From: Lepidodermella squamata | Taxonomy: Eukaryota > Animalia > Gastrotricha | Direction: 5' to 3' | Assembly: GCA_047495785.1 (NCBI GenBank) | Contig: JBLDXI010000007.1 | Span: 186,001-250,000, forward strand | Length of the DNA stretch: 64,000 nucleotides | Shown here: positions 12,445 through 57,597 of the stretch, piece after piece | Layout: each line of letters starts with the position of its first letter | Numbering within the stretch: position 1 is the first letter of the stretch | Notes under the pieces: model-generated | Seen by the model: only the letters and a program-made list of their open reading frames with translations | Databases searched by the model: none | Told to the model about the DNA's origin: nothing | Translations under genes and position numbers: made by a program

Positions 12445-12808
12445 ATGCATTTTTCCCAACTGGTCATCATTGTAGTCGCCTTGATTTCTGTTAGTATCAG
12501 CCGGTGCTGTGGCATGTGGCCAAGTTTCAGCGAACATCATGATCATCACTCAGCGTCCGATGAGCCATCGTCCCCTAGGAAAATGCTTCGTGATGTCACA
12601 ACCCAGGGATGCCTGCGTTGCTTCGCGGTAATTTAAATTAAAAACTAGTCCGATTACACTTACTTAACCGTAATTATATTTCTCTACGTAATAGCACAGT
12701 GTACCTGCATCCCTCGACTGCTTGAGGCGACGTCCTGTGTCACGGCTGGTTTACCTTCAGAAAAAATGCAGCACAAAAACGCATCATCGACATCAGGCTA
12801 TGAAATGA
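12445..12808 (+). CDS. P8: secreted CxxCF/CLRR family protein
   Basis: Exons 12445-12627 and 12695-12808; QGCLRCFA|HSVPASLDCLRRRPVSRLVYLQKKCSTKTHHRHQAMK*. Confidence 0.85.
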
Positions 12809-14696
12809 AACGTGGATCAAACCCTGAAATGATATCTGAACTTGTTTATAGTTTTTTTGGAATGACAATGTCATTAGATCAAAATGGAACAATTTATTCG
12901 ATTTGGCAAAGGAATAGTTGTTATCATCATTATTATTGATGTGATTACAGTTTGGAATGTCATCATTTTCAAGTTGCCGATTTGTTCAAATCCAATAAAA
13001 CAATGTGGACTCTGTTCAATGTGATTAAAAAACTTGCAGCGCTGTAATATATAATAGCTGAGAATTTCAAATAAAAGAGAAGTGGTGTTAGTTTAAGCCG
13101 GTTTTAAAAAAGCGCTATCAATTGCGGTGGTGGAAAGCTTGAAAGGCCCATCTTTCAAGTGACGATTACGAAAAAATGTCGACTCTTATATTCTTTTTAA
13201 GGAGTTTTTCACACTTGATAGACTTGCCTCATTTTACGTCCATGTCTTGTCACCGCAGTAATTCCCTCGCACTCGGGCAAAAATAAACCAATTTATGTAT
13301 CGATTGGTAGTAGAATCCTGAAAATCACAGGGCTGCACCATTTATCACAACAACAATAAACATCATGGGGAGTCACGACATCATTCTCGCCGCCCGCTCG
13401 TTGGCAAACAGTCAGCTAAAACAATGGCTAGCCCAAATTGTGATGTAAACAACAGCTTCAAGGGTTTCCAATTAAGTGATCATATATGTCGAGCCTATAC
13501 CAGTCGCTATTTACCCAACTGCGGTAGGTGGGAAGATGAAGTTGACGGATTTACAGCCAGGAAATAATAAAAGTGAGCAAAAAATTCGACCAAAAATCAC
13601 CATCGTCTGCATGCGATTGTCTCTACATCCGCCTAGTGTTGTTTTCATTTATTTACTTTTTATAGTATCAATATTAATATATATTCATCAGAGTTTGACA
13701 CAAGTTCGAATAATCGCGTCGCTGAGGTTGAACTGTTAAATATGCTTCGTATATAGCAATCTTGATTCAATTGCTAAGTTTGTCTGTGGTCTAATTAGCT
13801 GGCTAAATTGAGTGATCGAATCATCGATCGATAGCGGCCATTGTCCCTCTTCCCCCTGACAAGCTAATCGAATAGTAAATCAAATTGGACACAGAGGCCG
13901 TGAAATGTGCCATTGAAAAAAACAGGACCATTTGAAATTATATAGGCGAAGCGTGCTAATTGCGATTTTCTCACTTGCTATACAGCACAGGAAAAAATAA
14001 GGTTCACAAATTTTAAAGGATGCATAACTGCCCATTGCATGTTATAGCACATCCGATTGTGTACCCCGCCTACTCTGGCCCCTGGAACTTTATTTTGGGG
14101 TCACTTAGGTCCAATTTAATGGTAATACTGAAATAGCGCACTACTATCCCTTGTTTATTTCCAAGTCATTACGCCAATAATAATAATATCTTTTATATTG
14201 CTGAAATGTCAACGTTATCAAGGCTTTAGAGGGCGTTTTATAGTTATAATTCAATATAAGCCTTTTACTTATTGATCAAATTGTCAGTAAATTTTAAATT
14301 GGCCGGCTCAACGCAGTCCAGCAAATTTTGGTACTTATGTTTAAATCACTATCCGATAAGTTTAGTCTGTTTTAATGGAAGCATGACTATGATCGGTCAG
14401 ATAGTGTATCCCCATAGCATGGATTGACTTGTCATCATTGTTCTCTGAATATAAAATGAGTATAGAGGCTGTGTTATCATTTCTGATTTGTAAAATTTTT
14501 GCTCATTATTATTGGATAACCACGCGTTTCGTGATTTCGATTGATAGAACCTTTGTTCTCCAGGGTTTTCACAAGCCTAGTCATACTCCCGCGCTACCGC
14601 GCTACTAAACGCATACATTTTCTGATGATACATAAATTAGCTATAAAACTAATTTTAGCGTTTATTTCTCGCGATTTTTAGACATCAACTAGTGCA

Positions 14697-38576: not shown

Positions 38577-39701
38577 GGCTTGAAATGTCCCTATCAACCT
38601 GAGGATTGAAAAGATTGAGGTCAGAAATTCATAGACCAATTTTTTGCTATGTGTTTAACGCGGTCATATTGTCCGAGAACTAATGTATGCTCTGTATCTC
38701 ACGCATGAGGCCAGAATTCTATGGTTGAATGGTTGTCTCGTTATTAGCCAGGCCAATTTAGGCCATAACACGTATTATGGCTTATAGTTAGGTTTTAAAG
38801 TAAGAATTAATTTCGCCGCGCCTTGCCAGGATTTTCTTACATTTTCAGCGGGCTTAAATTGAGTGCTAAATTCTAATAAAAATTCTTAAATTGAAATTAT
38901 GAATTGAAATTAAAAAAAAATTATAAAAGATTTAAAAAATTTTAAATTAAAATATTATTAAAACTACTAATTAATAATCAAATTACTAATTACTAATTAA
39001 ATCCTGCAGCAATTAAAATAAAATTATTAGCATGGATCAAAGACCAACTTTAAAATTGTTGCAGGGCGAAGTTTGGATTTGATGCGACTGAAGTTTAAAA
39101 ATTATTGAAAAAACATACGTTTTTGGTTCCAAGTAGGTCGGACGTCGAGTTACCATGCTCTACACTGGCAGCAAGACGATACGTATTAAATCCATCTCTC
39201 CAGTTGCTCTTTTTGACACTGATATTTGCTTTTACACCGCGAAAGCCGCAGTTAAGCCCGGCTGCCGGGTTTTTTTTGCGGATTTAACAAAACAGGAGCT
39301 CAATTGCCCACATAAGCATCATCACACATTTTTGAATTCCAGCAGTAAAAACGTTCTACAAGTGCGTTTTATTGTTATTTTTTCGAGGGGGAAAAACCTG
39401 TGTTTTTTGCGTGAGATGCGAAATGGTGTGGTTAGCGAGCATCGCAGACACAAAGCGCGGTGTTTTTTTCGACACCTGAATTTGCATTTTATATCGTCAC
39501 CTACCCGTGCAATATACCTAGTTGTAATAAATAATACGCGGCCTCGGAAGCAGCCAAATCCTAGTGCAGCTGTGTTACCATACGTTAATAAAATTCATGT
39601 CACCCCATGGCAGTTTATTACTCGTTATGACAAGATAAGATTATAAGCATTGATAATATAGAATAATGTATCTTAGAAACCAATCCTGATAAAGCGAAAT
39701 T

Positions 39702-42700
39702 TCACGGATTTTGCAGGCAATTTCCGTCAAAATGGTTTTCAACCCGCGTTTCAGGACGGTTGAAGCCGCGGTAGAGAAGGCGCATCTCAGGGCTTGTGCA
39801 TCGATCAGCTTGATGTCCTCGACCGCCGCAGTTTTGACAGACCCGGAAAACTGGCGGTACCGATACTTGTGAGGCCTTCGACTCGGCCGTTTCATTATTA
39901 ACATATCGAATTGACATTTTTCGCAAGACTCTATCCCATAAAAAACGGCCACGCTATATAATTTCGAAAAAATATTTAAAAATTTTAAAAATTAAAATGT
40001 CCCACCCCTAGGCAAGTATTCCGCAGGTATTGCGACAGCAAATGCTCGAGAACCAGCAAAACCATGCATATTGAAATTCCGAAAAAGAGAAGCACAAAAG
40101 CCGATGTGAAGTTCATGACGCCAAGTTGGTAGCTTTTCTGCAGGTCCTGCTTTTTATACCGCTGGCAATCGCCAGTCAGCCAAAAGTCTGTCAACTGCTG
40201 AATGAACCCGTTATGCTGGTAGTCGATGATGTATTTATCGAAAATTTGTGTCCATTTCGAGCCTTTCGGGAAGCCGAGGGCATAGCCAGTGGTTGCGTAC
40301 CATTTGCCGACGATTTTCAGCTTGCATTGCTTATCTCGGCTGCTTTTGTACTCGAGAACTTTCGCGTCGTAAATAAACGCGTCCAGAGAGCCGTTTTTCA
40401 CCGCTGATACGCCATCGTCGACATTGCTTTTGTTGAACTGGCGCATGTATTCAAACATATCGGGATAGTTTTGCTTCAGGAAGGTCTCAGTGGCTCCGTG
40501 GCTGATAGTAGCGAATCGCCAAGGTGGGTTCTTGGTGTAGGGATTTTTTATTCTCGAGTCTTCCAAGCCAGAAAAATCGTGAAAATCCTCCTTCGTTATC
40601 ATGAAAACCGCCTGAAAATTAATATGTTGTATTCATGTATCGAATTATTTATATTGTTAATGTTTGAACAATCATATTCATCTTTAATACAGTTTTTAGC
40701 AAACCAATGATTTTTGGGTGGGTTTAGGGGTTGGGATTAGGTTCAGGACTTGGTTCAGGGTTCAGGGAACAGGGTTCAGGGCTTGGTTTGGGTTCAGGTT
40801 AGGTATAGGGATCAGGTTTCAGGATTCAGGTTAGGGTTAGGGAACAAGGTTCAGGGTTCGCGATCAGGGTTCAGGTTAGGCTTAGGGAATAGGATTCAGG
40901 GTTCAGGGTTCAGGGTTATGGGTATGGGTTATAGGTCAGGGTTATGAGTTGGGGTTAGGTTGAGTTTCGGGATTTGAACAAGTTGATTTTAGGGCTCTCG
41001 CACTTCCCGTTCGAAAAAATCAGAAGTATAGTAAACAAATGATGACTCACCAGATTAGCCATGTAAGAGGAAGAGAAAATGACGCAGAACATGCCCCAGA
41101 CGCACGTCATAAGTTTGGCGCTGAGGCTCTTAGGAATTTCGACCCTAACTACGGCTTTGAACAGCATTGACCAAGATAGCCAAAGCGAGGAAAACGGCGA
41201 AAACCGGCAAGCTGGTTACAGAATTTTTTCAACTTAAAATTCCGACCAGCTCGCTGAAAACTTACGATTTTGAGCAGTGTTATCGTTGCCTCTGAAAAGA
41301 GTGCTCGAATATTCGAATAGGAAAGTCGATACGGCACAAATATTGATTAGACCTGCCAAAATCGCAAACCAGGTTTCAGGCGAGAAAGGCTCTGAAATTC
41401 AAAATTTTAGCAAAATTCTTTATATTTCGTCGAAATTAAACCTAGAAAAGCCGTGGCGGAAGTCGCAACCTCTCTAACGCTAACCAACATGGTGATACCC
41501 TGCAGATAAAACAGGTTAAATTGCTAAAAATTGATAGAAACCAAACGAACCGTTTCGAGAAACGGAACCGAAAACTCAATGACTTGGCTTCGATCGCGGT
41601 TGATTTTCAAGCTAGTTATCGCGAGTTCAGCCTCCCCTGACATCAAAGCCTTTACTAAGCCATTCCACTGACCATCCTGCCGAAAAATCTTATATCCATA
41701 CAGAAAAAGGTTGGATTTCACAACAAATTGACTTTCTCTAGACCTTTTAACAAATTATAGAAATAATTAAGAAAATTTACATTGTGAGTACTGCCCCATT
41801 TTCGATCGTTTACTTCTGAAAGCTGAAACCGAAAACCGATATCTTCAGACAGCCTTCGCAGCAAGTCGACACAGAAACCGATACAGCAAATCCATGAATC
41901 ATTAGAATTATGCCCGATAGCTCGCATTTTATCGTTGACTTCAAGCGGTTTTATGCTGGAACCTTTCAAATTCGTATGCTCCAAATGGGCTAGTGGTGAC
42001 AGCTGGCACGGTATAGCAGTTCGAGAGCAAGACTTGGTGACAGGATTAACTGGCTCGTAGATAATATAAGGCGGCTCTTGCAGGGTTACAACTTTTATCG
42101 TTTCATAATCGTTGTCGACAACATCTTCCATAGCATGAAATACCTCCGTGGTTTTGAGGACTAGACCCGTTTTTCGTGTCCATTCGCCGAATGTTGTCCA
42201 CCTTCGCCGCGCGTCCAGGTTCAGTAGTAAGACTTTGTTCAACTCCATCGTGCCGCCATCGTCGAATTCTACGGAATCGCTTACATTACCACGCATGATA
42301 GGAACCTTACTCGTTCGAATGAACCTATTAAAAAAGGTCAGAATTTTAAGATGGGAAATTTGAGGTCAATTTACTCGATAAAGTCATCTTTTGGCGCCCA
42401 GTCGGTTTTGAGACGGTCATCGCAGACACTAGCCGGTGAAAGCCTTTCAGTAGCAGCATACGGCTCCTGAGCCAGCCTCCTAATAGCACTCGACCATATG
42501 TGAGCCGCAGCTTTAAGCGCGCCTAATTGCGCCTCGTAACTCGTATCATAGGTGACTACAACAGTCCCAGGTGCGAATGCCATGGCCTGCGATTTTAGAT
42601 CGTCATCGCCCAAGACTGGCTTGGCACATACCCAAGAGTACTCGGATGACGTCATACCCAGAGTTCGCGCCTCGGCGAAAATCTCGCTCGCCTCTTCTTT

Positions 42701-44121
42701 TGAAGTATACAGAACTATGAATCGTGTCTTGTCGTTATCTCGGATTGCTATCAGTTTCGAACGAACTATCTCGCGCCAATTCGAGCCTAGCTTCACGGTT
42801 CTCATAAGCCGAGACCCGGCGTAGTGTTGGACATGGATGTAGTTCGACGTTCGAGGGCTAGCCTCGCGGGTCTCCCGTTCAGACAGGCGATGCATTTCGT
42901 CGACGAAAGCTTCGTGCCCCGGTGTTTGGAGAGATTCGATCAGGCTGAATTTTTGGAATGAATGGGTTTTCAGGAATTCGTATAGAGCCTGAGCTTGGCT
43001 TCGAATTGAAGGAGCCAGTAGAAAATGAGGCGACCTGTCTAGCACAAGGTTGTCAGATTCGAGTTCGTATGCATTCGTGCTCCATTGAATAACCGGCATA
43101 CCAGCTATATAGGAATAGAGTAGGCTTTTAGCAAATTGAAGTTGATACCATTTCGAAATAAAATTGGAGACAAACATTCTTGCTCGGAAAGTCTTACCGG
43201 GATTGGCCCAAAATTGTGGACACCCTAAGTTGAAAGCTTAGAGCTTTGGTCCTTAATATCCATTTGTGCACAACTGATAAAAATTGGCAAATTTCACTGA
43301 AAAATATCTTTATTTTTGGGCTTTCCAGCGGTACCAAATTTGCCAGTACTTTCATTAATCATTGATTTAAAAAAATCAAAATGAGCTTCTAAATTCTCAA
43401 AAATTTACCTGCCGATCGAGATTCCTCGGGCCAGGGCTTGGCAATTTTCTTCCATTTTTAGACAATTTTTTTCAAATTGGATAACGTGTTTTTCCCAGAG
43501 TTAAGACCCAGGACCCATTACGTTATTTTGGGAAAGTTCATTGCTGGAAACCTGAATTTAGGCTGTCCAATTGGCACCCTATTTCTCTATAGGTCAATAA
43601 AAGGACACATAGTGGAATTTCAGATAATTTATAACTTCATGTGGTCCATTGATCTCACCTGCATTGGCCAGCATTGTTATGAAATTGGCCAAATGAGTTC
43701 CAGCCGATCCTTGAATCGAGCTATCTGCCAAGACAAAAACCGCATTGATGCCTTCAGCGGCCGGCGAGCAGAAGACATCGCGAACAGTCGAGTGTAAACT
43801 AGCGCCAGTAGCGTAAACGGGATTGACCTGCAATCTGTAAACAACGCGGCGATTAGGAACTCGCCGCCCATACATGCCAGCCCGTGTCGATGTCACATTG
43901 AAAAAATGTCGCAGTTGATCGCGAACTTGGCTCGACGTCAAATTACGAGTAGGCAGGACAAAGGCTATTGTCACCGTTTCAACGGTATACAGACCTCGCG
44001 CGACCGAACTCAAATCAGCATCGGATCCTAGATCGACGACTTTTTCAGCGGAATTTTGCGTTGAAATCGCGTCGAAAAAGGTGATCGCGACAATCACAAC
44101 TGCTATTGACAGCCTGGCCAT
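39702..44121 (-). CDS. NR2-D: GluN2/NMR-2-like iGluR subunit with C-terminal CCHC knuckle
   Basis: Signal peptide and ATD; VVTLQEPPY, CCIGFCVDLL, WNGLV, SLKINRDRS..FSVPFLET, WSMLFKAVV, SYMANL|AVFMI, AFIYDA, TGYALGFPKGS; last exon CQNCGGRGHQADRC. Confidence 0.9.
40715..40962 (+). repeat. Degenerate telomere-like G-rich repeat (TTAGGG/TTCAGGG) in an NR2-D intron
   Basis: About 250 bp of ggttcagg/ggttaggg units. Confidence 0.85.
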
Positions 44122-44550
44122 AAATTAATAGGAAAATATTTCGCGTAAATCATGTAAAGTGACAACAATGCAGTGATGTTTGTGAGCTGTCAGCCACCTT
44201 ATTAGCGCTGCTATTCACTTATTTTTTGCCTAATAATTCGCCGAAGGGTGGCATTTAGCGGCTTTGTCAAAAGTTGTTATTTGCTGAGAGATATAACAAC
44301 GCGCAGCGTCAAATGTATACTCAATAATAATAGAATTGTCGAGTTGGTGCATCGGATTTTTATTTTCAGTTGAGCAACAATTTCCGTATATATGTAAAAA
44401 TATACTCGAAGGCCAGCGTTCGGTTTCGATAAACATGCGGTCAAGCAAACAGTCGGGGCTGATACTTTTTATTTACGAAAGCCGGATACAATAAATATGA
44501 GACAATAATATATTTATATCGCTCTTTTGTCCGAGGTCAAAATGCAGTGA

Positions 44551-47500
44551 TTAGTCGCCGATAATATGCTTCATATGCGGACTGGTGCAGTCTATCGAGT
44601 TATGACCAATGCCGTTGCAATTCGAACAAACGATAGGCTCGGCTTCAACGCCGTCTACAGTTATGCAACGATTTTCTTTTGGCATGTAGATGAAGAATAA
44701 ATTGTCCAGCATCGCATCGATTTTTCGCTCCAGCTTTCTCTTGGCCTGAAAATTGTAAATAAAATTTGAATATTCCACCTTAATTAGTGCTAAAATTGCT
44801 CATCGCTTGCGCATTTTCACCTTTCCGGGGGTTCACCTTTTAAAAAATTCTTAGAAAATTTAAATTGTTTAAAAATCCTTCGCTTAAAAGCAAAATTAAT
44901 CACCTGATTGGGTGTGCCGTAATATGGGACAGAAATAAATATGAGGCTCATCCTTAGTAATAAAGTTTCCGAAATATTTCTATAGTTATAATTCCGACTT
45001 ACACATATAGACCCATTTTGTACGATTTGATTAAATATTTTGAGGGAATTAAAGTTCAATATTTAATGCGCTTACACCCTTAATAAAATCGATATTTATA
45101 CCAAATCTGCTTTGTTAGCCGGGAATCGTTTACGGCAAGGCAGCAGGAACAAAGCCGCCGCGAAGCCGAGTGTAAGAAGAATGAAGACAGACTGGATGTT
45201 TCGAATGCCGACTTGTTGACTTTTAACTTCATTCACCTGTGTATCACACTTCCCCGACATCCAATATCCACGTAAACTGTCGATATAACCTTTCGCCTGG
45301 TATTCGATGAGTAATTTGTCGAAAGTGTGGTGCCACAGGGAGCCCTGTTGGAACCCGATCCCGTAACCGGTGTTAGCGTGAACCTTTCCAGTCAAACGCA
45401 GCGAGCAATCTTTATCCCGTTTTGCTTTGTAAGCCAGGGCAGATGCGTCGTAAATAAAAGCGTCCAGCAATCTATTTTTACATAATATTAATAAGAAAAA
45501 ATTAATTTCAGAGATTTACCCGGTCTTAAGCGCAATCATAGCATCGTCAACTGATGTTTGGCTGTTGCCTTTAATCGATTCGTAAACCACTGGATAGTTG
45601 AATCTCAGGTATGCCTCAGTTGCCCCAGAGCTCAAAGTCGCGAACCGCCACGGTGGGCTTTTACTATGCGGATTTAGAATCCTCATATCGTCCAAACCAC
45701 CGAATTCGAAATAGTCATCCTTTGTTATCATGAAAACCGCCTGAAAATAAATTATGAAAAAAACGCACTGATATCGAATTAACTTATACGAACCAAATTA
45801 GCTGTGTAGGATGACGTGAAAATCAGGCAGAACATTGCCCAAACCCATGTCATTAATCTAGCCGCTATGCTATGCTTAGGTAATTCGACTGGAACAGTTG
45901 CCTTGAGCAGCATGGTATAGACACACCATAGGGCAGCGGAAAATGACAAGTTATGACCTGAAACGGATTAAAGAATTACTTGATTCCGCAAAAACTATTG
46001 CTAATACCTGGTTTCCATTTAGGGCTATTTCGAAACACAACGTAATCAAATCCGAAAATTAGACACCCTGAAATTAAGGAGACGCAGAAAATTCCGAGCC
46101 AGGCGTTCATCGAGAACGGCTCCAATATTGCGGTTGTTGAAGCTGTTGCATCTTTAACCGATACTGCCATAGTAATACCCTAAAATTTACGGAAAATTAT
46201 CGCCCAGTCGTTTTTTGAAAAGCTTACAGTTTCGAGAATAGGAATGCTGAAATCAACGACTTCACTCCGCTCCTTGTTGATTTTCAACGAAGTCACGACA
46301 ATGTCAGCCTGGTCGACAATTAGAGATCTCACTAGGCCGTTCCATTGGCCTGTTTTATCGGCCGCGCCCCATTTTCGATCAGGAACTTCGAACAGCTCGA
46401 TTTTGAAGTTCAAATCTTTCGCAAGTCGCAGTAAGACATCCATAAATAGCCCAGTCGCACATTGAATGTCAGCCCCTGGTATAATAGGACTGGTGTATTT
46501 ATCGGAATCTCTCTTATCGTAGTTGGCCCAGGAGAAGTTAACCGGCGCCATGCGGATAGGAATCTGCCCGATTTCGCATATTGTCTCACCACTATCCGAA
46601 CGGCTTTTCGGCTCACGGTACATGACAAAGGGCGGCTCGCTTAGCGTGGCTACGCGGAATTTAAGCGATGTTTTCACGTGTTTGTCATGCTCGTCAGCTT
46701 CGTGTATAAAGCCGGTTGTTCTATTCCAAGATCCGAAATGGCGCCATTTCCGGTCTTCGGCAAATTCGAGAAACACAATTTGCTCGTGCAATGCTCCGTC
46801 TTTAACACTCTCAGCCATGCTTTGATCTATAAGGCTTCAAATCACCAACAAATGTGATTAAAATAAACATTAAAATTAATTAATTAAAATGAAAATAAAA
46901 CAAAAATATTTAAACATTCCCGAATGTGCACAAATGTTTTTAATCGCCAAAAATCAGATAAAATTCCTAAAATCGCTAAAATTTGCAGATAAATCGGAAT
47001 CCATCTTTGAATGATATTTAAATTTTTTTCTGAAATAGAATTTATTTTTAATCCTCATAAAATCGGTTTTGTCTAAATTTACCCCACGTTACGGTATTTT
47101 TTAAATTTTATTTCTCAATTTTAAATATTATACCTGTTTAGGAATTCGCCGTTAACCCAAGGTTTCAGAACCATATCATGGCACACATTTCTCGGCGCCG
47201 CATTTAGCTGGGTAATATTGGCAAATTTTATGAATTTTTGCAGCGTCCTCATGTAGATGTCCGCACCAGCCTCGATTGCCTCAACTTGCGCCTCCACCGA
47301 CATGTTATAGGTGACCGCAATCGAACCAGGCGGTAGATTGGTTAGGCTTTTACCAAGATTATCGCCGCCTAAGACTGGCCTCATGCACAGCCACTTGAAC
47401 TGGGCCGATGTCATGCCTAACGAGTTGGCTTCTCGCAATATCTCATTCGCTAAAAACTCGCCAGAGAAAACGACTACAACATGACTTTTCGCTGCCGAAC

Positions 47501-48442
47501 CACGGATGAGAAGCAAATCCGAGCGAAGAGAAGACCGCCAATCTGAGGGTAGAATCCGCGCCTGGAGACGACGTTTATCCAGCTCGATGTGATCGTCAAC
47601 AATCGGCCCGTCCGTTCGACCGTGCTCCATGGCTAATAGGATCCGAACAAAAACGTCATGACCTGGTTGAGTTTCAGAGGCGATGATGCTGAATCGGCTT
47701 TTCGGATGCTTATCCAAGTAGGAAATTACAGCCTACAGAAAATTGTGAGATATTATTCTTCGAAATTTTTCCTTACTTGAGCATAACTTTGAATAGAAGG
47801 CGCGTGGATAAAGTGCGGAAGCCTGTTCATAGTCAATGAAGAACTGCCCAGCTCTGAAATTGATGAGCTCCATGCTAGCGTTGGAATTCCTATATTAGTC
47901 GCCTGAAAATGGACGATATTCGCGAGTGAATTCGCGCTCTCGCCCTGAACGGCCTTGTTAACCATAAGAAACACCGCATTAACACCCCATTCGGCTGCAT
48001 CGACTGGGCAAAACATGCGGCGAATAATTTGAACTAAGGATAAGTTATCAGGCTGGACAGGATTTATCTGCATCCGGAAGATGACTGTCTCACGACTTGG
48101 GTGCTGAGCGATCCCCACGTGACTCTGACTCAATAACCCATCCAATTTCCGTTGAAGGTAGTCAGGAAAATAGCCTTTTGGCGGTAATAGATATGAGATT
48201 GTCAGGGGGACTACAGGCACCTTTTGCGGGTAGATTTTAACCGGCTCAGAGACATTTTTGTCCTTTCTTCGCGGGTATTTGATCAAACGGCGACTTGACG
48301 GCGATGAATTAGAACGGGGCGGGGATGTACTTTGAGCCGAATTCCGATTGAAGAGGAGCTTAATCGAACCATCCCAAACTGCGGGGTGAAATGACTGAAC
48401 AAGGTTAACCCCCAGAAAAATTTGGAAAATTAGAAATTTCAT
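44551..48442 (-). CDS. NR2-C: GluN2-like iGluR subunit with C-terminal CCHC knuckle
   Basis: VATLSEPPF, KWG..GQWNGLV, SLKINKERSEVVDFSIP, YTMLLKATV, SYTANL|AVFMI, AFIYDA, TGYGIGF; last exon CSNCNGIGHNSIDC. Confidence 0.9.
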
Positions 48443-48552
48443 AGTAAAAAATAGAGTTTAATTTATTATTTTAGCTCTCGGCAAAACATATTGGTATCAA
48501 GTTACAAAAGCATTCTAGTTTACAGCTTTCGATATCAAATTGCGTTCTCGTA

Positions 48553-51500
48553 TTAATTATTCGTAGTCGAAATGACTAGCAGCGATCGGCGCATTTTCTC
48601 AGAGCTTGTCTCGTAGCGGTTGACGTTAAGGCCGCGAGACGTTGCTAAGGGTGATTGGGACATTATTGGGCTAGTGCATTGCGCGCGTCGATGGCCGATG
48701 CCGTCGCAATTCGCGCATCGAATGACATTTGGCCCAGGCGCTGCTGTTATCATGCGATCGCCGGCCCATGTTGAAGAGACGTAGCCATTTTCCAGCAGCC
48801 GCTTGATTTTTTCATCGACAGTCAGAGTCGCTACCTTAAAAATTAAAGACTAATCAATAAAAATTAAAAGAATTTCGGCTGAAAAAATTGACCTTATTAT
48901 TCTTTTTCAAACACTCGTATTGCAAAAATTTGATAAATCCACCAATTAACAGGCCAATTAGCAAAAGGATAAACGCCGGTAACATATCACTGCATCGAAG
49001 CTGGGCAGACCTGAACTCGTTAATTCGTGAACTATTACAATCACTACCCCCGAAAAACCACTGTTCTTCCAAGTTTTTCAGAAATCCTGAAACGAAACGA
49101 GATAAATTAAGAAATAATTATTTTTTAAATATTTTACCGTTATTTCGATAGTTGATTATCGCATCATCAAATACCGATAGCCAATCAGAGTCCTTCGGCA
49201 GCCCGAAACTGTAGCTAAACAAGCCGTGGGAATTAGGACCGATCTGTAGCATGCACTCTGAATCTTTCATTGCTTTGAATTTCAATATCGCCTCATCGTA
49301 TATAAATGCATCGTATCCCCTAAAAACGAGTTAATACATCAATTTTCTTGAGTATTCATTCTCTGAAATGTAACCTGTTTAGTAAGGACTCGATAGCACC
49401 ATCAACAGTGGTATTTGATAGGAATTCTATGTTTGGTAGGACATGATCAAAGCCGTTTCGTATGAAAGATAAGATGTCATCCTCAGCTAGGCTTGCGAGC
49501 CGATACCTCGGGTTCCTAGAGAAGGGATTCGCCAGTTTTTGATCATCAAGCCCGCTGAATTTTGCTTCCTCTCCAGCGTTTGATTCCGAAATGAGAAATA
49601 CAGCTAGATTAGCCGCGTAAAGGCAGGAGAAGATTGTACAACAAATAGCGACTACGGATCTGACTAGATTGACGGAATTTGATCGAGAACAACGGGTCGA
49701 TAGGCAAAGCTCAGAGCTGAAGATGCGATTTGGTTTAAATTTAGAGCCGGCCAAGTTTTCGAAAAGGCAAACGGAAAAACTAGCGAATATCAGCGTGACG
49801 AAGGTAGCAAACCACGTTTCCAACGAAAAAGGCTCTAAACAGCGCGATTATTTGAATTATCAAGGAATTATCGAAAATTATACCTAAGAGCAATTTCCAC
49901 TTGGGTTTCCTTTCAGAAACGTAAGCCAATGTTAGGCCTGTTTGAAGAACTGGAGTTGATATCTCGATGAAATCTGACTTGTACGCCAGGCTTGATTTCA
50001 GCGGCGCCAAAATTACGTCTGCTTCGCGGGAAACCACTTCATCCCACATCTTGTTGGCAAACTTTTAAAATTTCAAAATTAATTTAAATTATACTAACAG
50101 TAGTATTGTTTGTAAACAGCGACCTGAAATGAAAAAAAGTTGAGAATTATAGAAAAATAATTTTTTGGAGCAACCTCTCCTCTTTCGGTACTTCGTAAAA
50201 GTGTAGCTGGAAACCGATGTCTCTTGAGAGCCGCGAGATCAAATCGATAAAAAATCCGCGGATGCATGAAACACTTCTAGCCGGTAGAATAGGACTGTCG
50301 AAACAGGGAAAAGTTCCCAAAGGACATTTCTCAGCAGCATTTTTCGGGTCGAAAACGACAAAAGGCGCCGCGTGCCAGGTTCCAATTCGCAAATATCGGT
50401 TTCTTAACTGGCTTTCTATCGCTGATTTCTTTGAAATTTTCAAGCCCGAGAATTTATTCCAACTTGCAATAGACGTCCATTCTAGCGATTTGCTGAGCTC
50501 GAAGAATGTCACATTCTCGCCTGGACTGATTTCTTCCCCCGACAAATCGACCTCTGCCTTGGTATTGCGGAGAATTCGCTCGAGAACTTCGCCATAAGCC
50601 CATCCAGCGCCAAGGCGATCCCTGCCACAAAGTGACTTGGTCTTCGGCGAAATGTCATTCGGTGTCATATCGTAGAGCCTGGCGAACTTCTGCATGGCTT
50701 TAAACCAGAGACGAACTGCGTATCTCGCCGTTATCATTTGCGTTTCCATCCAATGATCGAAGGTGATAACGGTGGTACCAGGTGTGGCATTCACCAACCG
50801 CTCAAATTTACCATCTGGAGAGACAGCAATTACTTGAATTCTGCGATTATTTGCTATCCCCAAGTTTCGAATTTCCGTGAAGATTGAATCCAACATTACG
50901 TCACTGCTAGTGAGGAGAATTACTGCCTAAATACAAAAAAAATCAGTTATAGTTTTAATTTTGCACTTGCTTTGAACCTGTAAATTAGTGAATGAAGCAT
51001 TCCGGACGGTTAGCAGTTCCGATTTAACGACGGACTTCCAATTTGATCCCGGTAGTGTTCGACGACGAGGGGTAACCCATTCGCTCTGCTTTTTCATCGT
51101 CTCAAAGCTGAATTCGTTGAATCCCGGGGTACCTTCCATTCCTATCATGGTGATTTGACGTTTCCTGGGCCTTGAGTCGAGAAATGCAATCATTGCATTC
51201 GCCAACACTTTGGCTGACGGGAACAGCGAAACCTCGCCGGGCAAATGTTGTTCAAAGGCCGAGAAGCTCCATAATAGGTAAGGAATTTTCACGGAACTTG
51301 CAATAAACTTTAATAGATTCACCAAATCAGGACTTGTTTGGTCGTCCGAAATGATGACTAGCGCATTCAGACCAGTCGCCTGAGTCGAACAAAACACGTC
51401 ATTTACAGCCTCGTTAGCACCTGTCGACGCTAGGAAGACCGGGTTCAGTTGGAACCTGAAAATTATCGGCCGGTCGTTGCTAGCTCGATTAGGGGTGGAG

Positions 51501-51724
51501 ATGAACGTTTCGTGCTTTGAATTTATCCATTGAAATTGCGGATAGTTAAGGAGGTTTCGACTAGGTAGAACCACGCTTAGGGTGACTGGTTGCACGAGGA
51601 CAGCCCGAGGTACCTTGACGTTAAGACTTATCGTCCCGACGACTTTGGCAAAACAAAGCAGGCTAATAATCGATATCATTATTGTCAGTATTGTCCAGAA
51701 AAAAATAGTTTTATATTGGCTCAT
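48553..51724 (-). CDS. NR2-B: highly divergent GluN2-like subunit with CCHC knuckle and degenerate pore loop
   Basis: IGTWHAAPF, CIRGFFIDLI, LYAANLAVF, AFIYDE (exon ~49140-49320), M4; last exon CANCDGIGHRRAQC. Confidence 0.82.
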
Positions 51725-51864
51725 CAGCCCTCATCTATCAGTTCGCGACTGTATCAAATATCGCAGTGGCCATAACAACAAGTGACCCATATTATTTTCA
51801 CTGAGTTAGTTCAAAAGCCCAATATTTTGTAAATACGCATTGGTGCAATTTATTTTAGGTCATG

Positions 51865-54800
51865 TTAGGTTTGGTATTCTTTGATGGCTTTCAACAAATT
51901 CATAGGCGGACTGGCGCATTTTCTGAACGTGTGACCTCGACCGCCGCAATTGGCGCACACTAGGTAATTAAGGCTGACAGTCGCTAGGTCAAATCGTGGC
52001 TTTTTCGAGTCACTGTTCGTTGTAATCACGTATCTTCGCATCATTTGCTGCTTCAATTGAGCCCGGATTCCAGACTATAGAAATTATAACAAAATTAACG
52101 AAAAATCCTGTTTAATTTGGTTATGTCCCGTAAGCGCAACCTCAGGAGCGTAACCTCGCTTGTGCGTAACCATTTGTGTGCGCAACCGATGTGCGCGACC
52201 GACGTGCGCAACTATTGGGCGAAACCTGCTGTGTGTAAATAAATAAGTCAAAACACGAGGTAATTCCCATTAGTTCAACCGCGCAAATGTGCACATTCAC
52301 GGAATTTTCAACCAGCCGTGTATTTGTCTAACCAATTCGCCCAACTCTGCGAACACAAATTTAAAAAAATGTATTTATTCAAAATTTTAAAAAATTGCGT
52401 GATAAACGGAGCTAAAGTTTTGATCACCATCGTAAACCGTTTGCTAGCAAACATTTATTAATTCAACTGTTGACAACATGATCCACCTTAACATAAATAG
52501 CACCCCGGCTGCAGCTGTGAGGACGAAGAATCACAGCTACTAAGCGGACGCGGCAGGCCTCTGAAGACTCAAAATGAATCAATCTCGCAATCAAGATGGA
52601 TTTTGAAATGTGGTTTTTAGCTGTAGACAGGCAGCGAGCATTTTTTTAAATTACTGTAAGGCCACGCTATTAGGCTCTCTTGACGAAGTCGATGCTCGCG
52701 TTAATATTAATGGAATTACTTTTATGATCCACCTTAATAACAATAAAAAGTAATCACGGATGAAGTATCTCCTGAACGCGGAAAAGCAACGTCCTTTTGG
52801 AGTTCAAATCTCAACGGGCTATACTATAAAGCAAACAAGCCGCTGCGCGCACTCACACGTAGAGTCACCCTCGCCATCCTCGTCGCCTCTCCACGACTCC
52901 CCATGGTCTAGCGTCTAGCTTACCGCCACTTGAAATAATTCATCTTCCTTGATCACACCTGCGATGTTTGCGCACAATAATCGCACTGATACAAAAGCGT
53001 ACCTTTTATTGCAGGCTCATAAAAATTATTGCAGGTTCCTCCCTTCACCCCAGTACTTCGCCTAATGCAAAATTTCCAATAACTAGTTCGACTTTGAATC
53101 CGCTCGCATTTATCTGATTTGAGGGATTCAATATTTTCGATGGAAATTTCCTCCGGCAACAAGCTAATTTCTGACATTAATTTAAGATATTAAAATGTGA
53201 GCGAAGAAAATTTCTCCTTTGGTTTCAAAAGGCTGAATACACTCAGCCTTTCCTGGAATTATCTCTTCGCAAAAATAAGACTTTGGTGGACACACTAAAG
53301 AGCTGAACTTTGGAGCGCACGCTAATTGTTCAATTGATCGTAGCTACGACTCCGGGATTTTTTGCAAGAATGCAAGCACGATTACTGAAGGTTTTCCACT
53401 TAGCTGCCATGCTCTCTACTTCGCGGATGAGTTAGATCATAGCCGATCATGTCAAATGACTTGAACTAGAGGTGAAATTTCGTCAGCGGCGTTTCAAAAT
53501 TAATGGTAATTTTAATAAACTTTGGCATACAGCTGTAACATAAACGTTTTTGACAAGGAAAAAAATTACCGAAATTTTTTATAATTCATAGGGGTTTATC
53601 ACCCTAGCATATAGGGTATACATTTTCTCCCTGTTTTATGGTCGAAATAAATTTTCACCGTCTTCTAACAATTTTACGGCATAAATACAAAAGGTTACGC
53701 ACACAGGTTGCGCACAGCAAAAGTTACGCACAGAAAGTTACGCACGCGCGGTTGCGCTCTTGAGGTTGCGCTTACGGGAATTGACCGTTTAATTTTAGAC
53801 TTACCAGCCCCATGAATCTCACGATATATTTAGAAAAAAATGTTTCGAGTATCAAGATGAACATGCTGAGACAAAGGCCGAGAAGAAGCAGAACAAAGGC
53901 CGATGTGAAGTTGAGAATGCCAAGTTGGAACGATTTGTTAGACTCCTGTTTCCTGTGCTTCTTACAAGCTCCACTGAGCCAAAATTCGCTGAGCTGTTGC
54001 AGAAACGAATTGTGTTGATAATCAATCACGTATTTATCGAAAACTGGCAGCCACTTTGAGCCTTTCGGAAAGCCAATGCCGTACCCGGTCATCGAGTACC
54101 ACTTGCCAACTGTTGTCAGACGGCACTCCTTATCCCGGCTTGATTTGTAGTCCAAAACAGTTGCGTCGTAGATGAATGCATCGAGGGTACCGTTTTTTAC
54201 AGCTTCAATGCCGGTTTGAGCCGAACTCTGGTTGAACTGGCGCATGTATTCGAACATGTCCAGGTAATTAGTGCGCATGAAGGCCTCCGTAGCGCCCGAT
54301 GATAGAGTGCCGAAGCGAAATGGCGGGTTTTTCGAGAAAGGATTCTGAAGCTTTTTAAGTTGAAATTTTAGAAAAGGAAAAATCTGTAAAACCTGTAAGC
54401 TTACCCGTGGGTCTTCTAGTCCTGTAAAGTCGTAAAATTCATCTTTCGTGATCATGAAAACAGCCTGGAAATTCATCAAATTATTTCGAGAAAATTGAAA
54501 GTCGAGAGAAACTAACAAGATTAGCCATGTATGAAGAAGCGAAAATCACGCAAAACATGCCCCAAATTGCGATTAGAAACTTTGCGGCAAATGTTTTCGG
54601 AACTTGAACTCGAACGGCGGCCTTGAAAAGCATGGCCCATACCAACCAAAGTGACGAAAATAATGGATGGACAGCTGGAGTAAAATTAATATTTTTTCCA
54701 AATTTGCAGGCATTTTAATTAATTATACATGATTTTCTGCTGGTCATTTGCTGGATTTCGTAGTTATGGTCTGTTCCCCAGTTCTCACTCTTCACAGCGA

Positions 54801-57597
54801 TGTATTCGAAGACAAACGAAGATACGACTACGGCGTTGACACATCCGATCATGATTGCAAGCCAAGCCATCATAGAAAAAGGCTCAAGAATCGCCATTGC
54901 CGAGATGGCTCCTTGTTTTATCGCTACAACCATTGTTATACCCGTCTCAAGGAACGGTATGCCGAAATCGATGGCCTCACTCCGGTCTTTGTTAATTTTC
55001 AACGACGTCATCACAACATCGGCCTCACCGTCGATAAGAGCCCGAACTAGACCGTTCCATTCACCGCTAAATTTATCCTTGACACCCCTGAAATGAACCA
55101 CCTTAATTCTGCGTGAAAAATGCCAGGAAACTGACCATTTTTGATCTTTGACTTCGAATAGGTGGAATTTAAATCCGATGTCGTTGGATAAACGGATGAG
55201 CAAGTCGATACATAGGCCGGAACAACAAATTTTCGAACCGTTGGCTACGTGATCAGTTTCTTCTGGCAAATTGTACTCGCCGAAATACGATGCATTAAGT
55301 TGTCTGAAAAAAAATTAAATATTCATACATCGGAAAAATGGAACAAAATTGAAAGCTTTTTCAACAATCAAATTCACACACGTCAATCCGCCACAAAAAA
55401 AGCAAAATTGACCTCATTTCCTTGATAATCAATCCAAGACTTTCTGTTTCAGAAATATCCCTTGACCTAACACGGATGACATAGGGTCGTGAAAATGCTA
55501 AAAAATCGATAAAAAAATAATATAAAAAATACTTACTCCTCGTAACTTTCTTTGATTTTGTTAGACCGTGAAACTTCGCAAGGTAAGGTTCCTCTTGGAC
55601 ATGACCCCGTGTGATCGGCCGAACCGTAAATAACATAAGGCGGCTCTTCCAAGGTGGCAATACGTAGCGTTGCACTGTCAATCTGACTAGTCTTCATTTG
55701 AACAATCTGCGTCGCATTAGCAACCAGTCCGTAGTTAGGCGACCACTCGCCGAATTTTACCCACTGCCTTATCGGGTTTAAATACGCCAAAATGAGGCGC
55801 TCTGTCGATTGGAAATGATCGTCGTCGCCCTTGGCAAGTTCGGCCTTGGCCTGGGCCAGTTCATCGGCGAATGCGTCATGATAAGCCCACGGTTCTGGGT
55901 TCATAACTTTGTCGCAAAACGGCTCGGGAGCTATAGCGTCGAGAATTATCTGGGGATGCGATGTCTCTTCGTCATCGAGTAACGTCTGGATGAATCGCCT
56001 CACGGCAACAGACCAAATGTGAGTCGCACCTTTAATAAATCAAAATGACCGATTACCGATTATTATAACAATTTAGACCAGAACCCTTCCTAAATTTAGG
56101 ACTCCACTACTCAGCGGTGAGGAGACATTTAGAAAATATGATAAGCCAAAGGATTTGGGTAATTTTGGACAACAAATGTCTTTGGGCGTTTTAAAATCAG
56201 TCCAACGTCAGAAATTTAAGACGAAGGTGTGTAAAATGATTTTTTATGTTCTTACAAATTTTGGCGATTTTGCTATTTTTGCCTATTTTTGGTGATCGAA
56301 AGCATTTTTGAATTGAGTTTGACAAATAGCGGGTAATTTGGGGCGCTAATTTGCATATGGAATGACATTGTGAGCTTTCAGTTTTTATTGATCCTTGGGC
56401 CAATAAAAAAATAAAAAAAAAATGACCCAGTCCGAAATTCTCCTAAATAATCATGAAAATTCCGAAAATTTCGAAATGGCATTTTTTGGGTGAACTAATT
56501 ATTTCAGTAATACATAAAACATTTCCTGTCTCACCTTTTAGGATTTCAAGCTGAGCATCATAGGATGTATCGTATGTTACAACAATCACGCCAGGTACGA
56601 AATTGAGTAAGGGTGTATCGTTAATATCGTTATCACCAAGAGCCGGCTTGCCAACAATCCAAAGGTACTCCTCAGCAGTCATTCCGAGGGTCCTCGCCTC
56701 GCTAAACACGTCATTAGCTTCCTCGGCTCGTGCGTACAAAACTATGGCTCGAGTTTTAGCAGAGTCGCGAATGTAAAGTAATTCCTCACGAACCATCGAC
56801 CGCCAATCACGGCCGAGCTTCGCCACATGGATCTAAAAATAAATTATAAGTAACAAATAGATTTTGTCGAAGAATTCTTATACTAGTCTCGAAGCTGAGT
56901 GGTGGCGATGTAGGTCGTAGGTCGTCTGAGACGATCGCCTCTCCTTATCAGCCAGTTCGAAAAGCTCCCTCGCAAACGCATCATGACCCGGCGTAAGCTC
57001 AGTCCCAATTAAACTGAATTTCTGCCACGGTTGCGATTTTAGAAAGTCGAAAATCGCCGTAGCTTGCTCTTGAATTCGCGGCGCTAACAACAGCCGATTT
57101 TGTTCGTTATCATGCTCGAGCTCGAATGACGACGAACTCCATGCGAGCGTAGGAATTCCGACATTTTTTGCGAGGCTGGTTAAAAAATTAGCCATCCTCG
57201 TGCCATCGTCGCCCTGTTCGCGCTTATCAGTAATAATCAGAATCGCATTAAGGCCTTTCGCAGCTCTTGAGCAAAACACGTTTCGAACAGTTTCCTGAAC
57301 GCTCATGCCTTTAACGTAGACAGGATTAACCTGAAGCCGGTGGACTATGCCCCGATGTTCGCCGGAGTCGCTGCTGCTTTCGAATGGCAGGTAATTCGGC
57401 AAGAGACCATCGGCTAAATACTGCCGCAAATTGTTACGCGTCGACGGCTTTGTCAGGTTATGATTAGGCAGTACGAAGGCCAGAGTTGCCGTTAAAATGT
57501 GGGCTGGTATCAGTGGTTCTTGCTTCAGATTGCGTGGTTTTAGAGCAAGAGCCGAGGCGAGAAAAAAGGGCGCAAAAAATATGCTTAAAAAATCCAT
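51865..57597 (-). CDS. NR2-A: most conserved GluN2/NMR-2-like subunit with C-terminal CCHC knuckle
   Basis: IATLEEPPY, CCSGLCIDLL, SLKINKDRSEAIDFGIPFLETG, WLVWAMLFKAAV, SYMANL|AVFMITK, AFIYDATVLDY, WYSMTGYGIGFPKGS; last exon CANCGGRGHTFRKC. Confidence 0.92.
52127..53778. mobile_element. 1.65-kb TIR DNA transposon in the last intron of NR2-A
   Basis: TIR cccgtaagcgcaacctcaggagcgtaacc versus ggttgcgctcttgaggttgcgcttacggg; subterminal gtgcg(t/c)aacc repeats at both ends; no intact transposase ORF and no clear TSD. Confidence 0.85.

What the first reader, a model, noticed from the sequence alone, without database searches (positions are those of the whole stretch)
41140..54640. Lysine at the Q/R/N selectivity-filter site in three NR2 paralogs
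Seen: M2 tips WAMLFKAAV (AAG, 54622-24), WSMLFKAVV (AAA, 41156-58) and YTMLLKATV (AAG, 45902-04). Known: this position aligns with vertebrate GluN2 WGLVFNNSV (N site) and insect NR2 LFQAAV, and a basic residue here (edited GluA2 R) removes Ca2+ permeability and cation block. Inference: genomically encoded Ca2+-impermeable, Mg2+-insensitive NMDA-type channels, perhaps with some anion permeability.
Basis: partly seen in the sequence, partly recalled or inferred. Interest (0 to 1): 0.78.

Follow-up and report, generated by a model that had tools for sequence, protein, structure and literature searches.

The report
NMDA receptor subunits with pore lysine
Three intact neighbouring genes of a small invertebrate encode NMDA-type glutamate receptor subunits with a positively charged lysine fixed at the pore position that normally lets calcium through and binds magnesium, so they probably form low-calcium channels, though this is untested and similar pores exist in copepods and rotifers.

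Summary
Three minus-strand genes each encode Lys exactly where stated: A 39702-44121, B 44551-48442 and D 51865-57597, about 1000 aa each. A gapless alignment to solved GluN2 chains puts the Lys on GluN2A N614 (the N site) and the next Ala on N615. An AlphaFold model of the closest database ortholog puts it directly after the pore helix.

The genes are true GluN2-type subunits by domains, PDB matches, fold and tree. They belong to a lineage-specific expansion inside spiralian GluN2. The Lys is kept in all three ortholog pairs with an uncultured relative (44-63% identity) and in a fourth lineage there, using both AAA and AAG. A sister paralog has Asn (AAC), one base away. Gene A is transcribed and spliced; no edited letter was reported.

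Context lowers the surprise. Protostome GluN2 usually has Gly, Ser or Gln here, not Asn. Lys arose independently in copepods (Eurytemora GluN2B), and rotifer GluN2 has Arg. A second basic residue at +4 is shared only by rotifers and this clade.

Reduced Ca2+ permeation, Mg2+ block and conductance are a reasonable inference from GluN2A N615K, GluN3 and edited GluA2, but nothing here tests it. Anion permeability is speculation. The scan also noted a Lys-pore NMDA subunit elsewhere in this genome.

The parts
39702..44121 (-). Gene A: intact GluN2-type gene, 9 exons, 1025 aa. It has an amino-terminal domain, S1, M1, the M2 pore loop, M3, S2, M4 and a C-terminal tail with a CCHC knuckle.
   Evidence: tblastn; splice junctions and an open model without stops; Pfam ANF_receptor and Lig_chan-Glu_bd on its exons. 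RNA-like contigs of the same species cover its exons and show junctions 41051|40611 and 43659|43104, and a loose end fitting acceptor 41688.
41051..41211 (-). Gene A pore exon (M2 loop to SYMANL of M3). Lys codon AAA at 41156-58, Ala at +1, Arg at +4, Glu at +6.
   Evidence: Gapless HMMER alignment to GluN2A/B/C/D chains places Lys on GluN2A N614.
44551..48442 (-). Gene B: intact GluN2-type gene, 8 exons, 997 aa. It is the most divergent of the three (37-38% identity to A and D).
   Evidence: Pfam Lig_chan-Glu_bd 1.6e-22 on its S1 exon. No coverage of the part laid (up to 46400) in the one RNA-like run.
45794..45957 (-). Gene B pore exon. Lys codon AAG at 45902-04, Pro at +4, Glu at +6, M3 SYTANL.
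51865..57597 (-). Gene D: intact GluN2-type gene, 9 exons, 999 aa. The last exon (51865-52074, with the CCHC knuckle) lies 1.7 kb beyond the M4 exon.
   Evidence: Its S2-M4 exon matches GluN2A chains at 4e-39 and its S1-M1 exon matches GluN2 chains at 6e-22.
54517..54674 (-). Gene D pore exon. Lys codon AAG at 54622-24, Arg at +4, Gln at +6, M3 SYMANL.
48553..51724 (-). Gene C: fourth tandem paralog, very divergent (about 25-30% identity). Its M2 pore loop is shortened and degenerate and M3 reads CLYAANL, so it has no N-site equivalent. Listed for context; it is not one of the three Lys genes. Limits are approximate.
   Evidence: tblastn; translation; CCHC knuckle at 48676-48717.

Best explanation
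Genes A, B and D are functional GluN2-type NMDA receptor subunit genes from a lineage-specific tandem expansion in a spiralian micro-invertebrate. Their ancestor acquired Lys at the pore-loop N site. From the Asn codon AAC kept by the sister paralog, this takes a single third-position change. The Lys has been held by selection through at least three further duplications and a speciation.

Inferred mechanism: each subunit binds glutamate, because the pocket residues are those of ordinary protostome GluN2. It assembles with the species' GluN1, which places two Lys ammonium groups at the narrowest part of the pore. In the A and D lineages there are two more Arg or Lys four residues below. By analogy with GluN2A N615K, GluN3 (Gly/Arg) and edited GluA2(R), this should repel divalent cations. 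The expected result is low Ca2+ permeability, weak or absent voltage-dependent Mg2+ block and low unitary conductance. That would make it a hard-wired NMDA-family counterpart of the GluA2 Q/R switch.

Shown here: gene integrity, GluN2 identity, position of the Lys, its conservation, and transcription of gene A. Inferred only: assembly with GluN1 and every permeation property.
For: - Position: the Lys aligns gaplessly to GluN2A N614. In the AlphaFold model of ortholog P0178 (pLDDT 85) the pore helix is residues 296-308, Lys309 is the first residue after it, and M3 is 320-350.
- GluN2 identity: PDB sequence hits are GluN2A-D only at the top. The top 50 Foldseek hits are all GluN2 chains. Trees place the genes inside protostome/spiralian GluN2.
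- Ligand pocket: W485, S511, K513, R518, A689, T690, Y730 and D731 match annelid, mollusc and arthropod GluN2.
- Gene integrity: open full-length models with canonical introns of about 50 nt.
- Conservation: ortholog pairs winA/P0178, winB/P0040 and winD/P0123, and a fourth Lys lineage in L005-L008, all keep Lys with both AAA and AAG codons at 44-63% protein identity. The sister paralog P0186 has Asn AAC.
- Expression: spliced RNA-like contigs of gene A, with no changed letter reported over the pore exon.
- Functional analogies: PMC6418762, PMC2974739, PMC12226733, PMC13246513.
Against: - No electrophysiology exists for these or any natural Lys/Arg-type GluN2 that I could find.
- Protostome GluN2 already lacks the N-site Asn (Gly 61, Gln 56, Ser 21 in the census). 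GluN2's role in the filter may therefore differ from vertebrates, and GluN1 may dominate.
- The best-studied mutation, N615K, is at N+1, not at the N site.
- No GluN1 gene was seen, because it lies outside the window.
- Only gene A has transcript evidence. That evidence comes from assembled contigs, which cannot exclude partial RNA editing.
- Glu or Asp at +6 could partly neutralise the charge.
Confidence: 0.55

Rival explanations
1. The Lys is tolerated but has little functional weight. In protostome NMDA receptors the GluN2 N site is a variable position (Gly, Ser, Gln, Lys), and permeation and block are set mainly by GluN1 and other pore residues. On this view these are ordinary NMDA receptor subunits.
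For: The census shows Gly, Gln, Ser, Asn, Lys and Arg all occurring at this column in otherwise conserved GluN2 pores. In copepods Lys simply replaces the arthropod Gln in an unchanged LF-x-AAVNVDCP context. PMC2974739 reports a stronger contribution of NR1 than NR2 when N-site residues are swapped.
Against: A fixed charge differs in kind from Gly, Ser or Gln. Lys at the adjacent GluN2A position cuts conductance four-fold and removes most Mg2+ block even in one copy (PMC6418762). The Lys is invariant across four deeply diverged lineages, and in most of them it is joined by a second basic residue at +4 seen nowhere else except rotifers.
Confidence: 0.2
2. The Lys-type subunits do not conduct. 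They act as dominant-negative, modulatory or non-ionotropic (scaffolding or signalling) glutamate-binding subunits.
For: The A and D lineages have a doubly basic pore loop (Lys at 0, Arg or Lys at +4), and the M3 gate threonine is replaced by Met (SYMANL). Tandem gene C has lost a normal pore loop altogether. Earlier notes of this scan report pore-loop-less AMPA-type receptors in the same genome (unchecked). All four genes end in an unusual CCHC knuckle.
Against: M1, the M2 helix, M3 and M4 are otherwise well conserved and align without gaps to conducting GluN2. GluA2(R) and GluN3, which also carry pore arginines, still conduct monovalent cations.
Confidence: 0.12
3. The basic pore makes the channel appreciably anion-permeable, or Na+-selective in the manner of the Lys of the sodium-channel DEKA filter. 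This would give a glutamate-gated conductance of a new ionic type.
For: There could be up to four added positive charges per tetramer in the filter and just below it. From my own knowledge, homomeric Arg-form kainate and AMPA channels show measurable Cl- permeability.
Against: This is purely by analogy. GluN1 would still contribute Asn. An acidic residue remains at +6 in A, B and several orthologs.
Confidence: 0.08
4. The genomic Lys is not what the protein carries. A-to-I editing of AAA/AAG would give Arg, Glu or Gly, a reversed version of the GluA2 Q/R switch.
For: AAR codons can be edited in principle. Only contigs, which drop minority variants, were available.
Against: No changed letter was reported in the RNA-like contigs over gene A's exons. 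I did not look for an editing-complementary hairpin.
Confidence: 0.03
5. The genes are decaying duplicates, or the Lys is an assembly or annotation artefact.
For: Tandem duplicates often decay, and gene C looks degenerate in its pore.
Against: There are three open models of about 1000 aa with clean splice sites. Orthologs on independent metagenome contigs from several samples carry the same Lys. A DNA run holds the window stretch whole and identical.
Confidence: 0.02

Closest known systems
Protostome (spiralian) GluN2 NMDA receptor subunits, e.g. Capitella, Mizuhopecten, Patella GluN2B-like
   Same: Same domain order, about 40-48% identity in the LBD-TMD core, the same protostome-type ligand-pocket residues, and the same Ala at N+1. 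The window genes nest inside this clade.
   Different: Those have Gly or Ser at the N site, a neutral residue at +4 and a conserved Asp at +6. The window genes have Lys at 0, Arg at +4 (A, D) or Pro (B), and Glu or Gln at +6. A and D have Met in place of the M3 gate Thr, and all have a C-terminal CCHC knuckle.
Rotifer GluN2-like proteins (Rotaria sp. CA-numbered protein P0283; Brachionus plicatilis 'NMDA 2B isoform X5' P0292)
   Same: They have a basic residue at the N site (Arg) and a basic residue at +4 (Lys). That combination is seen only in them and in the Lys clade among about 190 pores surveyed. They are the sister group in the tree, with SH-aLRT 88, which is not decisive.
   Different: Arg rather than Lys, no acidic residue at +6, and long branches between the groups. 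I found no functional data or published comment on them.
Copepod GluN2B (Eurytemora carolleeae RefSeq protein P0198 and copepod-like metagenome proteins)
   Same: Lys at the same column, LFKAAV.
   Different: An independent origin inside the arthropod clade. The rest of the pore loop is standard arthropod (NVDCP) with no basic residue at +4, and it appears to be the ordinary GluN2 rather than an expanded family.
Human GRIN2A N615K and related pore variants
   Same: An Asn-to-Lys change at the tip of the GluN2 pore loop. It markedly reduces Mg2+ block and lowers conductance four-fold (PMC6418762), and lowers Ca2+ permeation (as cited in PMC12226733).
   Different: It lies at N+1, one residue after the position occupied here. 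It is pathogenic and de novo, not a conserved wild-type state.
GluN3 subunits (Gly at N, Arg at N+1) and RNA-edited GluA2(R)
   Same: Natural iGluR subunits that place a basic side chain at the filter. They make heteromers Ca2+-impermeable and insensitive to Mg2+ or polyamine block (PMC2974739; PMC13520880 also reports a genomically encoded pore Arg in a Hofstenia AMPA receptor).
   Different: GluN3 binds glycine and forms a separate clade, and the window genes are not in it. The GluA2 Arg is made by editing, whereas here the Lys is in the DNA.

Membership tests
GluN2 (NR2) NMDA receptor subunits | iGluR architecture: amino-terminal domain, bipartite ligand-binding domain (S1/S2), M1, re-entrant M2, M3 with SYTANLAAF-type motif, M4 | tested here: met
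   Pfam ANF_receptor and Lig_chan-Glu_bd on exons. Full models of 997-1025 aa carry all segments. The M3 motif is SYMANLAVF in A and D and SYTANLAVF in B.
GluN2 (NR2) NMDA receptor subunits | Closer in sequence and fold to GluN2 than to GluN1, GluN3 or AMPA/kainate/delta subunits | tested here: met
   The top PDB sequence hits for the S1-M1, pore and S2-M4 exons are all GluN2A-D. The top 50 Foldseek hits of the ortholog model are GluN2 chains.
GluN2 (NR2) NMDA receptor subunits | Phylogenetic placement inside the GluN2 clade, with GluN1 and GluN3 outside | tested here: met
   Protostome GluN2 clade SH-aLRT 99-100, spiralian subclade 96, with GluN3-like and GluN1-like rows outside. These are quick trees with SH-aLRT support only.
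GluN2 (NR2) NMDA receptor subunits | Glutamate-type ligand pocket (GluN2A R518, S511, T690, Y730, D731) | tested here: met
   All are conserved. T513 is Lys and S689 is Ala, but T513K is the protostome norm and S689A is shared with several spiralian GluN2. Ligand identity itself was not tested.
GluN2 (NR2) NMDA receptor subunits | Asn at the N and N+1 sites of the pore loop (the vertebrate 'Asn cage') | tested here: not met
   The sites hold Lys and Ala. This feature defines deuterostome GluN2 only. Protostome GluN2 has Gly, Ser or Gln followed by Ala, so the failure does not remove the genes from the family.
GluN2 (NR2) NMDA receptor subunits | Obligate assembly with glycine-binding GluN1; Mg2+ block; high Ca2+ permeability | not testable with these tools
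   This needs heterologous expression. No GluN1 gene lies in the window.
Basic-pore, Ca2+-excluding iGluR subunits (functional class: GluA2(R), GluK2(R), GluN3) | Basic side chain at or next to the Q/R/N position at the pore-loop tip | tested here: met
   Lys is on the N-site column and is the first residue after the pore helix in the model.
Basic-pore, Ca2+-excluding iGluR subunits (functional class: GluA2(R), GluK2(R), GluN3) | Measured low PCa/PNa, loss of Mg2+ or polyamine block, low conductance | not testable with these tools
   Inference only, from PMC6418762, PMC2974739 and PMC12226733.

The most novel reading that the evidence does not exclude
Rotifers and this lineage share an old family of GluN2 subunits with a doubly basic pore loop (Lys or Arg at the N site plus Lys or Arg at +4). 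These subunits would convert NMDA-type receptors into channels of a different ionic kind, either strictly monovalent and Ca2+-excluding or partly anion-permeable. An Asn-type paralog would keep the classical coincidence-detector role. This would be a genome-encoded NMDA-receptor equivalent of the GluA2 Q/R switch, evolved by gene duplication instead of RNA editing.
Probability: 0.12. Interest if true: 0.85.

Novelty: new variant of a known kind. Interest (0 to 1): 0.5.

Why it matters
The N-site region of NMDA receptors underlies Ca2+ entry and Mg2+ block, the basis of coincidence detection. In humans a Lys next to this site causes epileptic encephalopathy. Here the same chemistry is the conserved wild-type state of a whole subunit family that sits beside an Asn-type paralog.

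That offers natural material for three questions:
- How much of NMDA-receptor permeation is set by GluN2 outside vertebrates.
- Whether animals without GluA2-type editing reach Ca2+-impermeable glutamate receptors by duplication.
- Whether basic pore loops arose repeatedly. This work finds Lys in this clade and in copepods, and Arg in rotifers.

It also cautions against treating the N-site Asn as a family-wide invariant.

Tried and rejected
- **Lys outside the filter tip.** Rejected by the gapless alignment to solved GluN2 chains and by the structure model.
- **Not GluN2 but another iGluR class.** Rejected.
- **Gene C as the ortholog of the Asn-type paralog P0186.** No support; C is 25-30% identical to everything.
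- **JGI metagenome scan with a pore-region alignment.** It matched 169 pattern stretches, but none was a relative by tblastn.
- **Literature searches for a described natural Lys or Arg at the GluN2 N site.** They found none. The Stroebel and Paoletti 2021 review, which might discuss it, is not in the library. PMC7932188 was read and was irrelevant.
- **dN/dS.** Not attempted, because synonymous sites are saturated at 44-63% protein identity.
- **Species naming.** Run names were coded and no NCBI-annotated protein is closer than about 50%. I infer only a spiralian related to rotifers, from the gene tree.
- **Joined spliced models.** These were used only inside scripts (tree, identity, stop check). 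They were not sent to search or fold tools. Exons were searched by reference, and the database ortholog P0178 was folded instead.
Full report
**Observation**

The three sites are exactly as described, on the minus strand.
- Gene A reads ...WLSWSMLFKAVVRVEIPKS...SSSYMANL, with Lys AAA at 41156-58.
- Gene B reads ...WCVYTMLLKATVPVELPKH...TSSYTANL, with Lys AAG at 45902-04.
- Gene D reads ...WLVWAMLFKAAVRVQVPKT...ASSYMANL, with Lys AAG at 54622-24.

A motif scan finds only these three pore-plus-M3 exons in the window.

**What the genes are**

tblastn with database relatives shows four tandem minus-strand paralogs. I built models from GT..AG junctions that keep the frame.

| Gene | Span | Exons | Length |
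|---|---|---|---|
| A | 39702-44121 | 9 | 1025 aa |
| B | 44551-48442 | 8 | 997 aa |
| D | 51865-57597 | 9 | 999 aa |

None of the three has a stop, and most introns are about 50 nt.

Gene C (about 48.6-51.7 kb) is far more divergent. Its pore loop is shortened to an unrecognisable stretch before CLYAANL.

Evidence that A, B and D are GluN2:
- Pfam finds the amino-terminal (ANF_receptor) and ligand-binding domains on the exons.
- Gene D's S1-M1 and S2-M4 exons and gene A's pore exon, searched separately by reference, hit only GluN2A-D chains at the top of the PDB list (4e-39, 6e-22, 1e-8).
- An AlphaFold model of the nearest database ortholog P0178 (63% identical to A overall, pLDDT 85) has GluN2 chains as its 50 best Foldseek matches.

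**Where the lysine sits**

The HMMER alignment of the gene A pore exon to GluN2 chains is gapless over 47-50 residues. It is anchored by the conserved Trp eight residues before and the Pro eight residues after. Lys falls on GluN2A N614 (the N site) and the following Ala on N615 (N+1).

In the P0178 model the pore helix is residues 296-308. Lys309 is the first residue after it, and M3 starts at 320. pLDDT is above 90 there.

**Ligand pocket**

Mapped through the PDB numbering, the pocket residues are W485, S511, K513, R518, A689, T690, Y730 and D731. This is the pattern of annelid, mollusc and arthropod GluN2. T513K is general in protostomes, and S689A is shared with flatworm and other spiralian sequences. 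Nothing suggests loss of agonist binding.

**Relatives and conservation**

The exhaustive profile search gave 1546 hits. The closest are unnamed proteins from ENA metagenome assemblies. The closest named ones are tardigrade, mollusc and nematomorph GluN2 at 46-51%.

One metagenome organism carries four relevant genes, on scaffolds of the same sample:
- P0123, pore MLFKASVKVHIP.
- Its tandem neighbour P0040, pore MLTKSILPVELP.
- A third gene, P0193/P0001, pore MLFKAAVKVDLP.
- A fourth, P0186, pore MLFNATGNIKQP, with Asn.

P0178 (MLFKAVVRVEIP) comes from a further contig.

Two maximum-likelihood trees gave the following:
- The ortholog pairs are winA/P0178, winB/P0040 and winD/P0123 (SH-aLRT 96-100).
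- The six Lys genes form one clade (97).
- P0186 (Asn) is their sister (99-100).
- The whole group lies inside spiralian GluN2 (91 in the first tree, 96 in the second).

The triplication therefore predates the split of the two organisms. Full-length identities are 37-47% between paralogs and 44-63% between orthologs, yet the Lys is invariant.

Both AAA and AAG are used, so the amino acid has been kept through synonymous change. The Asn paralog uses AAC, one transversion away.

**Expression**

One run that behaves like RNA of the same species (99% identity) covers gene A exons and not its introns. It shows junctions 41051|40611 and 43659|43104 with GT..AG on the minus strand. A loose end also fits acceptor 41688.

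No differing letter was reported, so there is no sign of editing of the Lys codon. These are assembled contigs, however, and they drop minority variants. Gene B had no coverage over the part laid.

**How unusual is it?**

| Residue at N site | Count |
|---|---|
| Gly | 61 |
| Gln | 56 |
| Asn | 24 (plus 7 on a looser anchor) |
| Ser | 21 |
| Lys | 9 (plus 2) |
| Arg | 2 |

- Asn is the deuterostome state. Protostome GluN2 has Gly or Ser (spiralians, nematodes, chelicerates) or Gln (insects, crustaceans), always followed by Ala.
- Lys outside this clade occurs in the copepod Eurytemora carolleeae GluN2B (an NCBI protein) and in copepod-like metagenome proteins. These sit inside the arthropod clade, so this is an independent origin.
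- The rotifers Rotaria and Brachionus have Arg (LFRVPAKV, LFRVATKT). In the second tree they are sister to the Asn-plus-Lys group, with SH-aLRT 88, which is not decisive.
- A long-branch Nematostella NMDA-class protein also aligns a Lys here.
- A basic residue at +4 (Arg in A, D and P0178; Lys in P0123, the L005-L008 gene and both rotifers) occurs in no other pore surveyed. This hints that the doubly basic loop is a shared derived trait of rotifers and this lineage.
- The protostome-wide Asp at +6 is Glu, Gln, His or Asp in the Lys clade and is lost in rotifers.
- The A and D lineages and P0186 also replace the M3 gate Thr by Met. PMC13246513 describes the Thr ring as part of the channel gate.

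**Mechanism**

Established knowledge on basic residues at the filter:
- The filter of GluN1/GluN2 receptors is an 'Asn cage' that partly dehydrates Ca2+ and holds hydrated Mg2+ at its entrances (PMC13246513).
- GluN2A N615K markedly reduces Mg2+ block and lowers conductance four-fold, even in one copy (PMC6418762). It also lowers Ca2+ permeation (as cited in PMC12226733).
- The GluN3 Gly/Arg pair makes receptors Ca2+-impermeable and Mg2+-insensitive (PMC2974739).
- An Arg at or beside the AMPA Q/R site, whether edited or genomic, removes Ca2+ permeation and polyamine block (PMC13520880).

On that basis the most likely effect of two Lys, and in A and D two further Arg, in a GluN1/GluN2 tetramer is low Ca2+ permeability, weak Mg2+ block and low conductance.

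This is inference. The studied Lys mutation is at N+1 rather than N. Protostome GluN2 pores already differ from vertebrate ones, and assembly with GluN1 was not testable. Anion permeability or Na+ selectivity is possible but rests on analogy alone.

**Comparison and novelty**

These are members of the GluN2 family. They fail only the vertebrate-specific Asn criterion. They are a variant defined by a conserved basic N site, usually with a basic +4.

I found no paper describing natural Lys or Arg at this site. The key evolutionary review was not available, however, and Lys- and Arg-bearing copepod and rotifer sequences already sit unremarked in public databases.

I therefore rate it a new variant of a known kind with moderate interest. 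It is a good, testable natural experiment.

Joined spliced models were built and used only inside scripts. Searches and folds used exon references or database proteins.

Another first-stage note reports a Lys at the Q/R/N site of an NMDA subunit on a different piece of this genome (s1-410501). I did not check it, but it fits the fourth Lys lineage seen in the relative.

Noticed in passing
window 39798-39839, 44587-44628, 48676-48717, 51916-51957 (minus strand): All four tandem GluN2 paralogs end in a CCHC zinc-knuckle motif (C-x2-C-x4-H-x4-C, e.g. CQNCGGRGHQADRC) in their last exon. The metagenome ortholog P0001 has it contiguous with M4 in one ORF. It was found in only 1 of the 294 proteins fetched, many of which are fragments. 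This is the subject of another first-stage note (s1-384310).
   Followed up: partly
window about 48553-51724 (minus strand), pore region 49356-49838: Gene C is a fourth, very divergent tandem paralog. Its M2 pore loop is cut down to about a dozen unrelated residues and its M3 motif reads CLYAANLAVF. It may be a pore-loop-less receptor like the AMPA-type ones noted elsewhere in this genome, or a decaying copy.
   Followed up: partly
window 41051-41068 and 54517-54534; L002:10544-10564: The M3 gate motif SYTANL reads SYMANL in the A and D lineages and SFMANL in the Asn-type paralog P0186. This replaces the Thr of the gate 'Thr ring' by Met. The B lineage keeps Thr.
   Followed up: no
proteins P0283 (Rotaria sp.) and P0292 (Brachionus plicatilis): Rotifer GluN2-like proteins carry a genomically encoded Arg at the N site and Lys at +4. 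I found no paper in my searches that comments on this.
   Followed up: partly
protein P0198 (Eurytemora carolleeae GluN2B) and P0194, P0196, P0199, P0238: Copepod GluN2 has Lys at the N site in an otherwise standard arthropod pore loop (LFKAAVNVDCP versus insect LFQAAVNVDCP). This is an independent origin.
   Followed up: partly
window 35590-38639 (minus strand): A NACHT-type NTPase exon followed by a 526-aa ankyrin-repeat exon lies just downstream of gene A. It was noted separately by the scan (s1-384529).
   Followed up: no
L001:7755-10166 and 10931-13666: In the related metagenome organism the orthologous GluN2 genes are almost intron-free, with single ORFs of 803 and 912 aa. The window genes have 8-9 exons with introns of about 50 nt.
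   Followed up: no
window 43258-43454: Inside the gene A intron the DNA run shows about 7-fold higher summed depth and many short partial matches. This suggests a dispersed repeat there.
   Followed up: no
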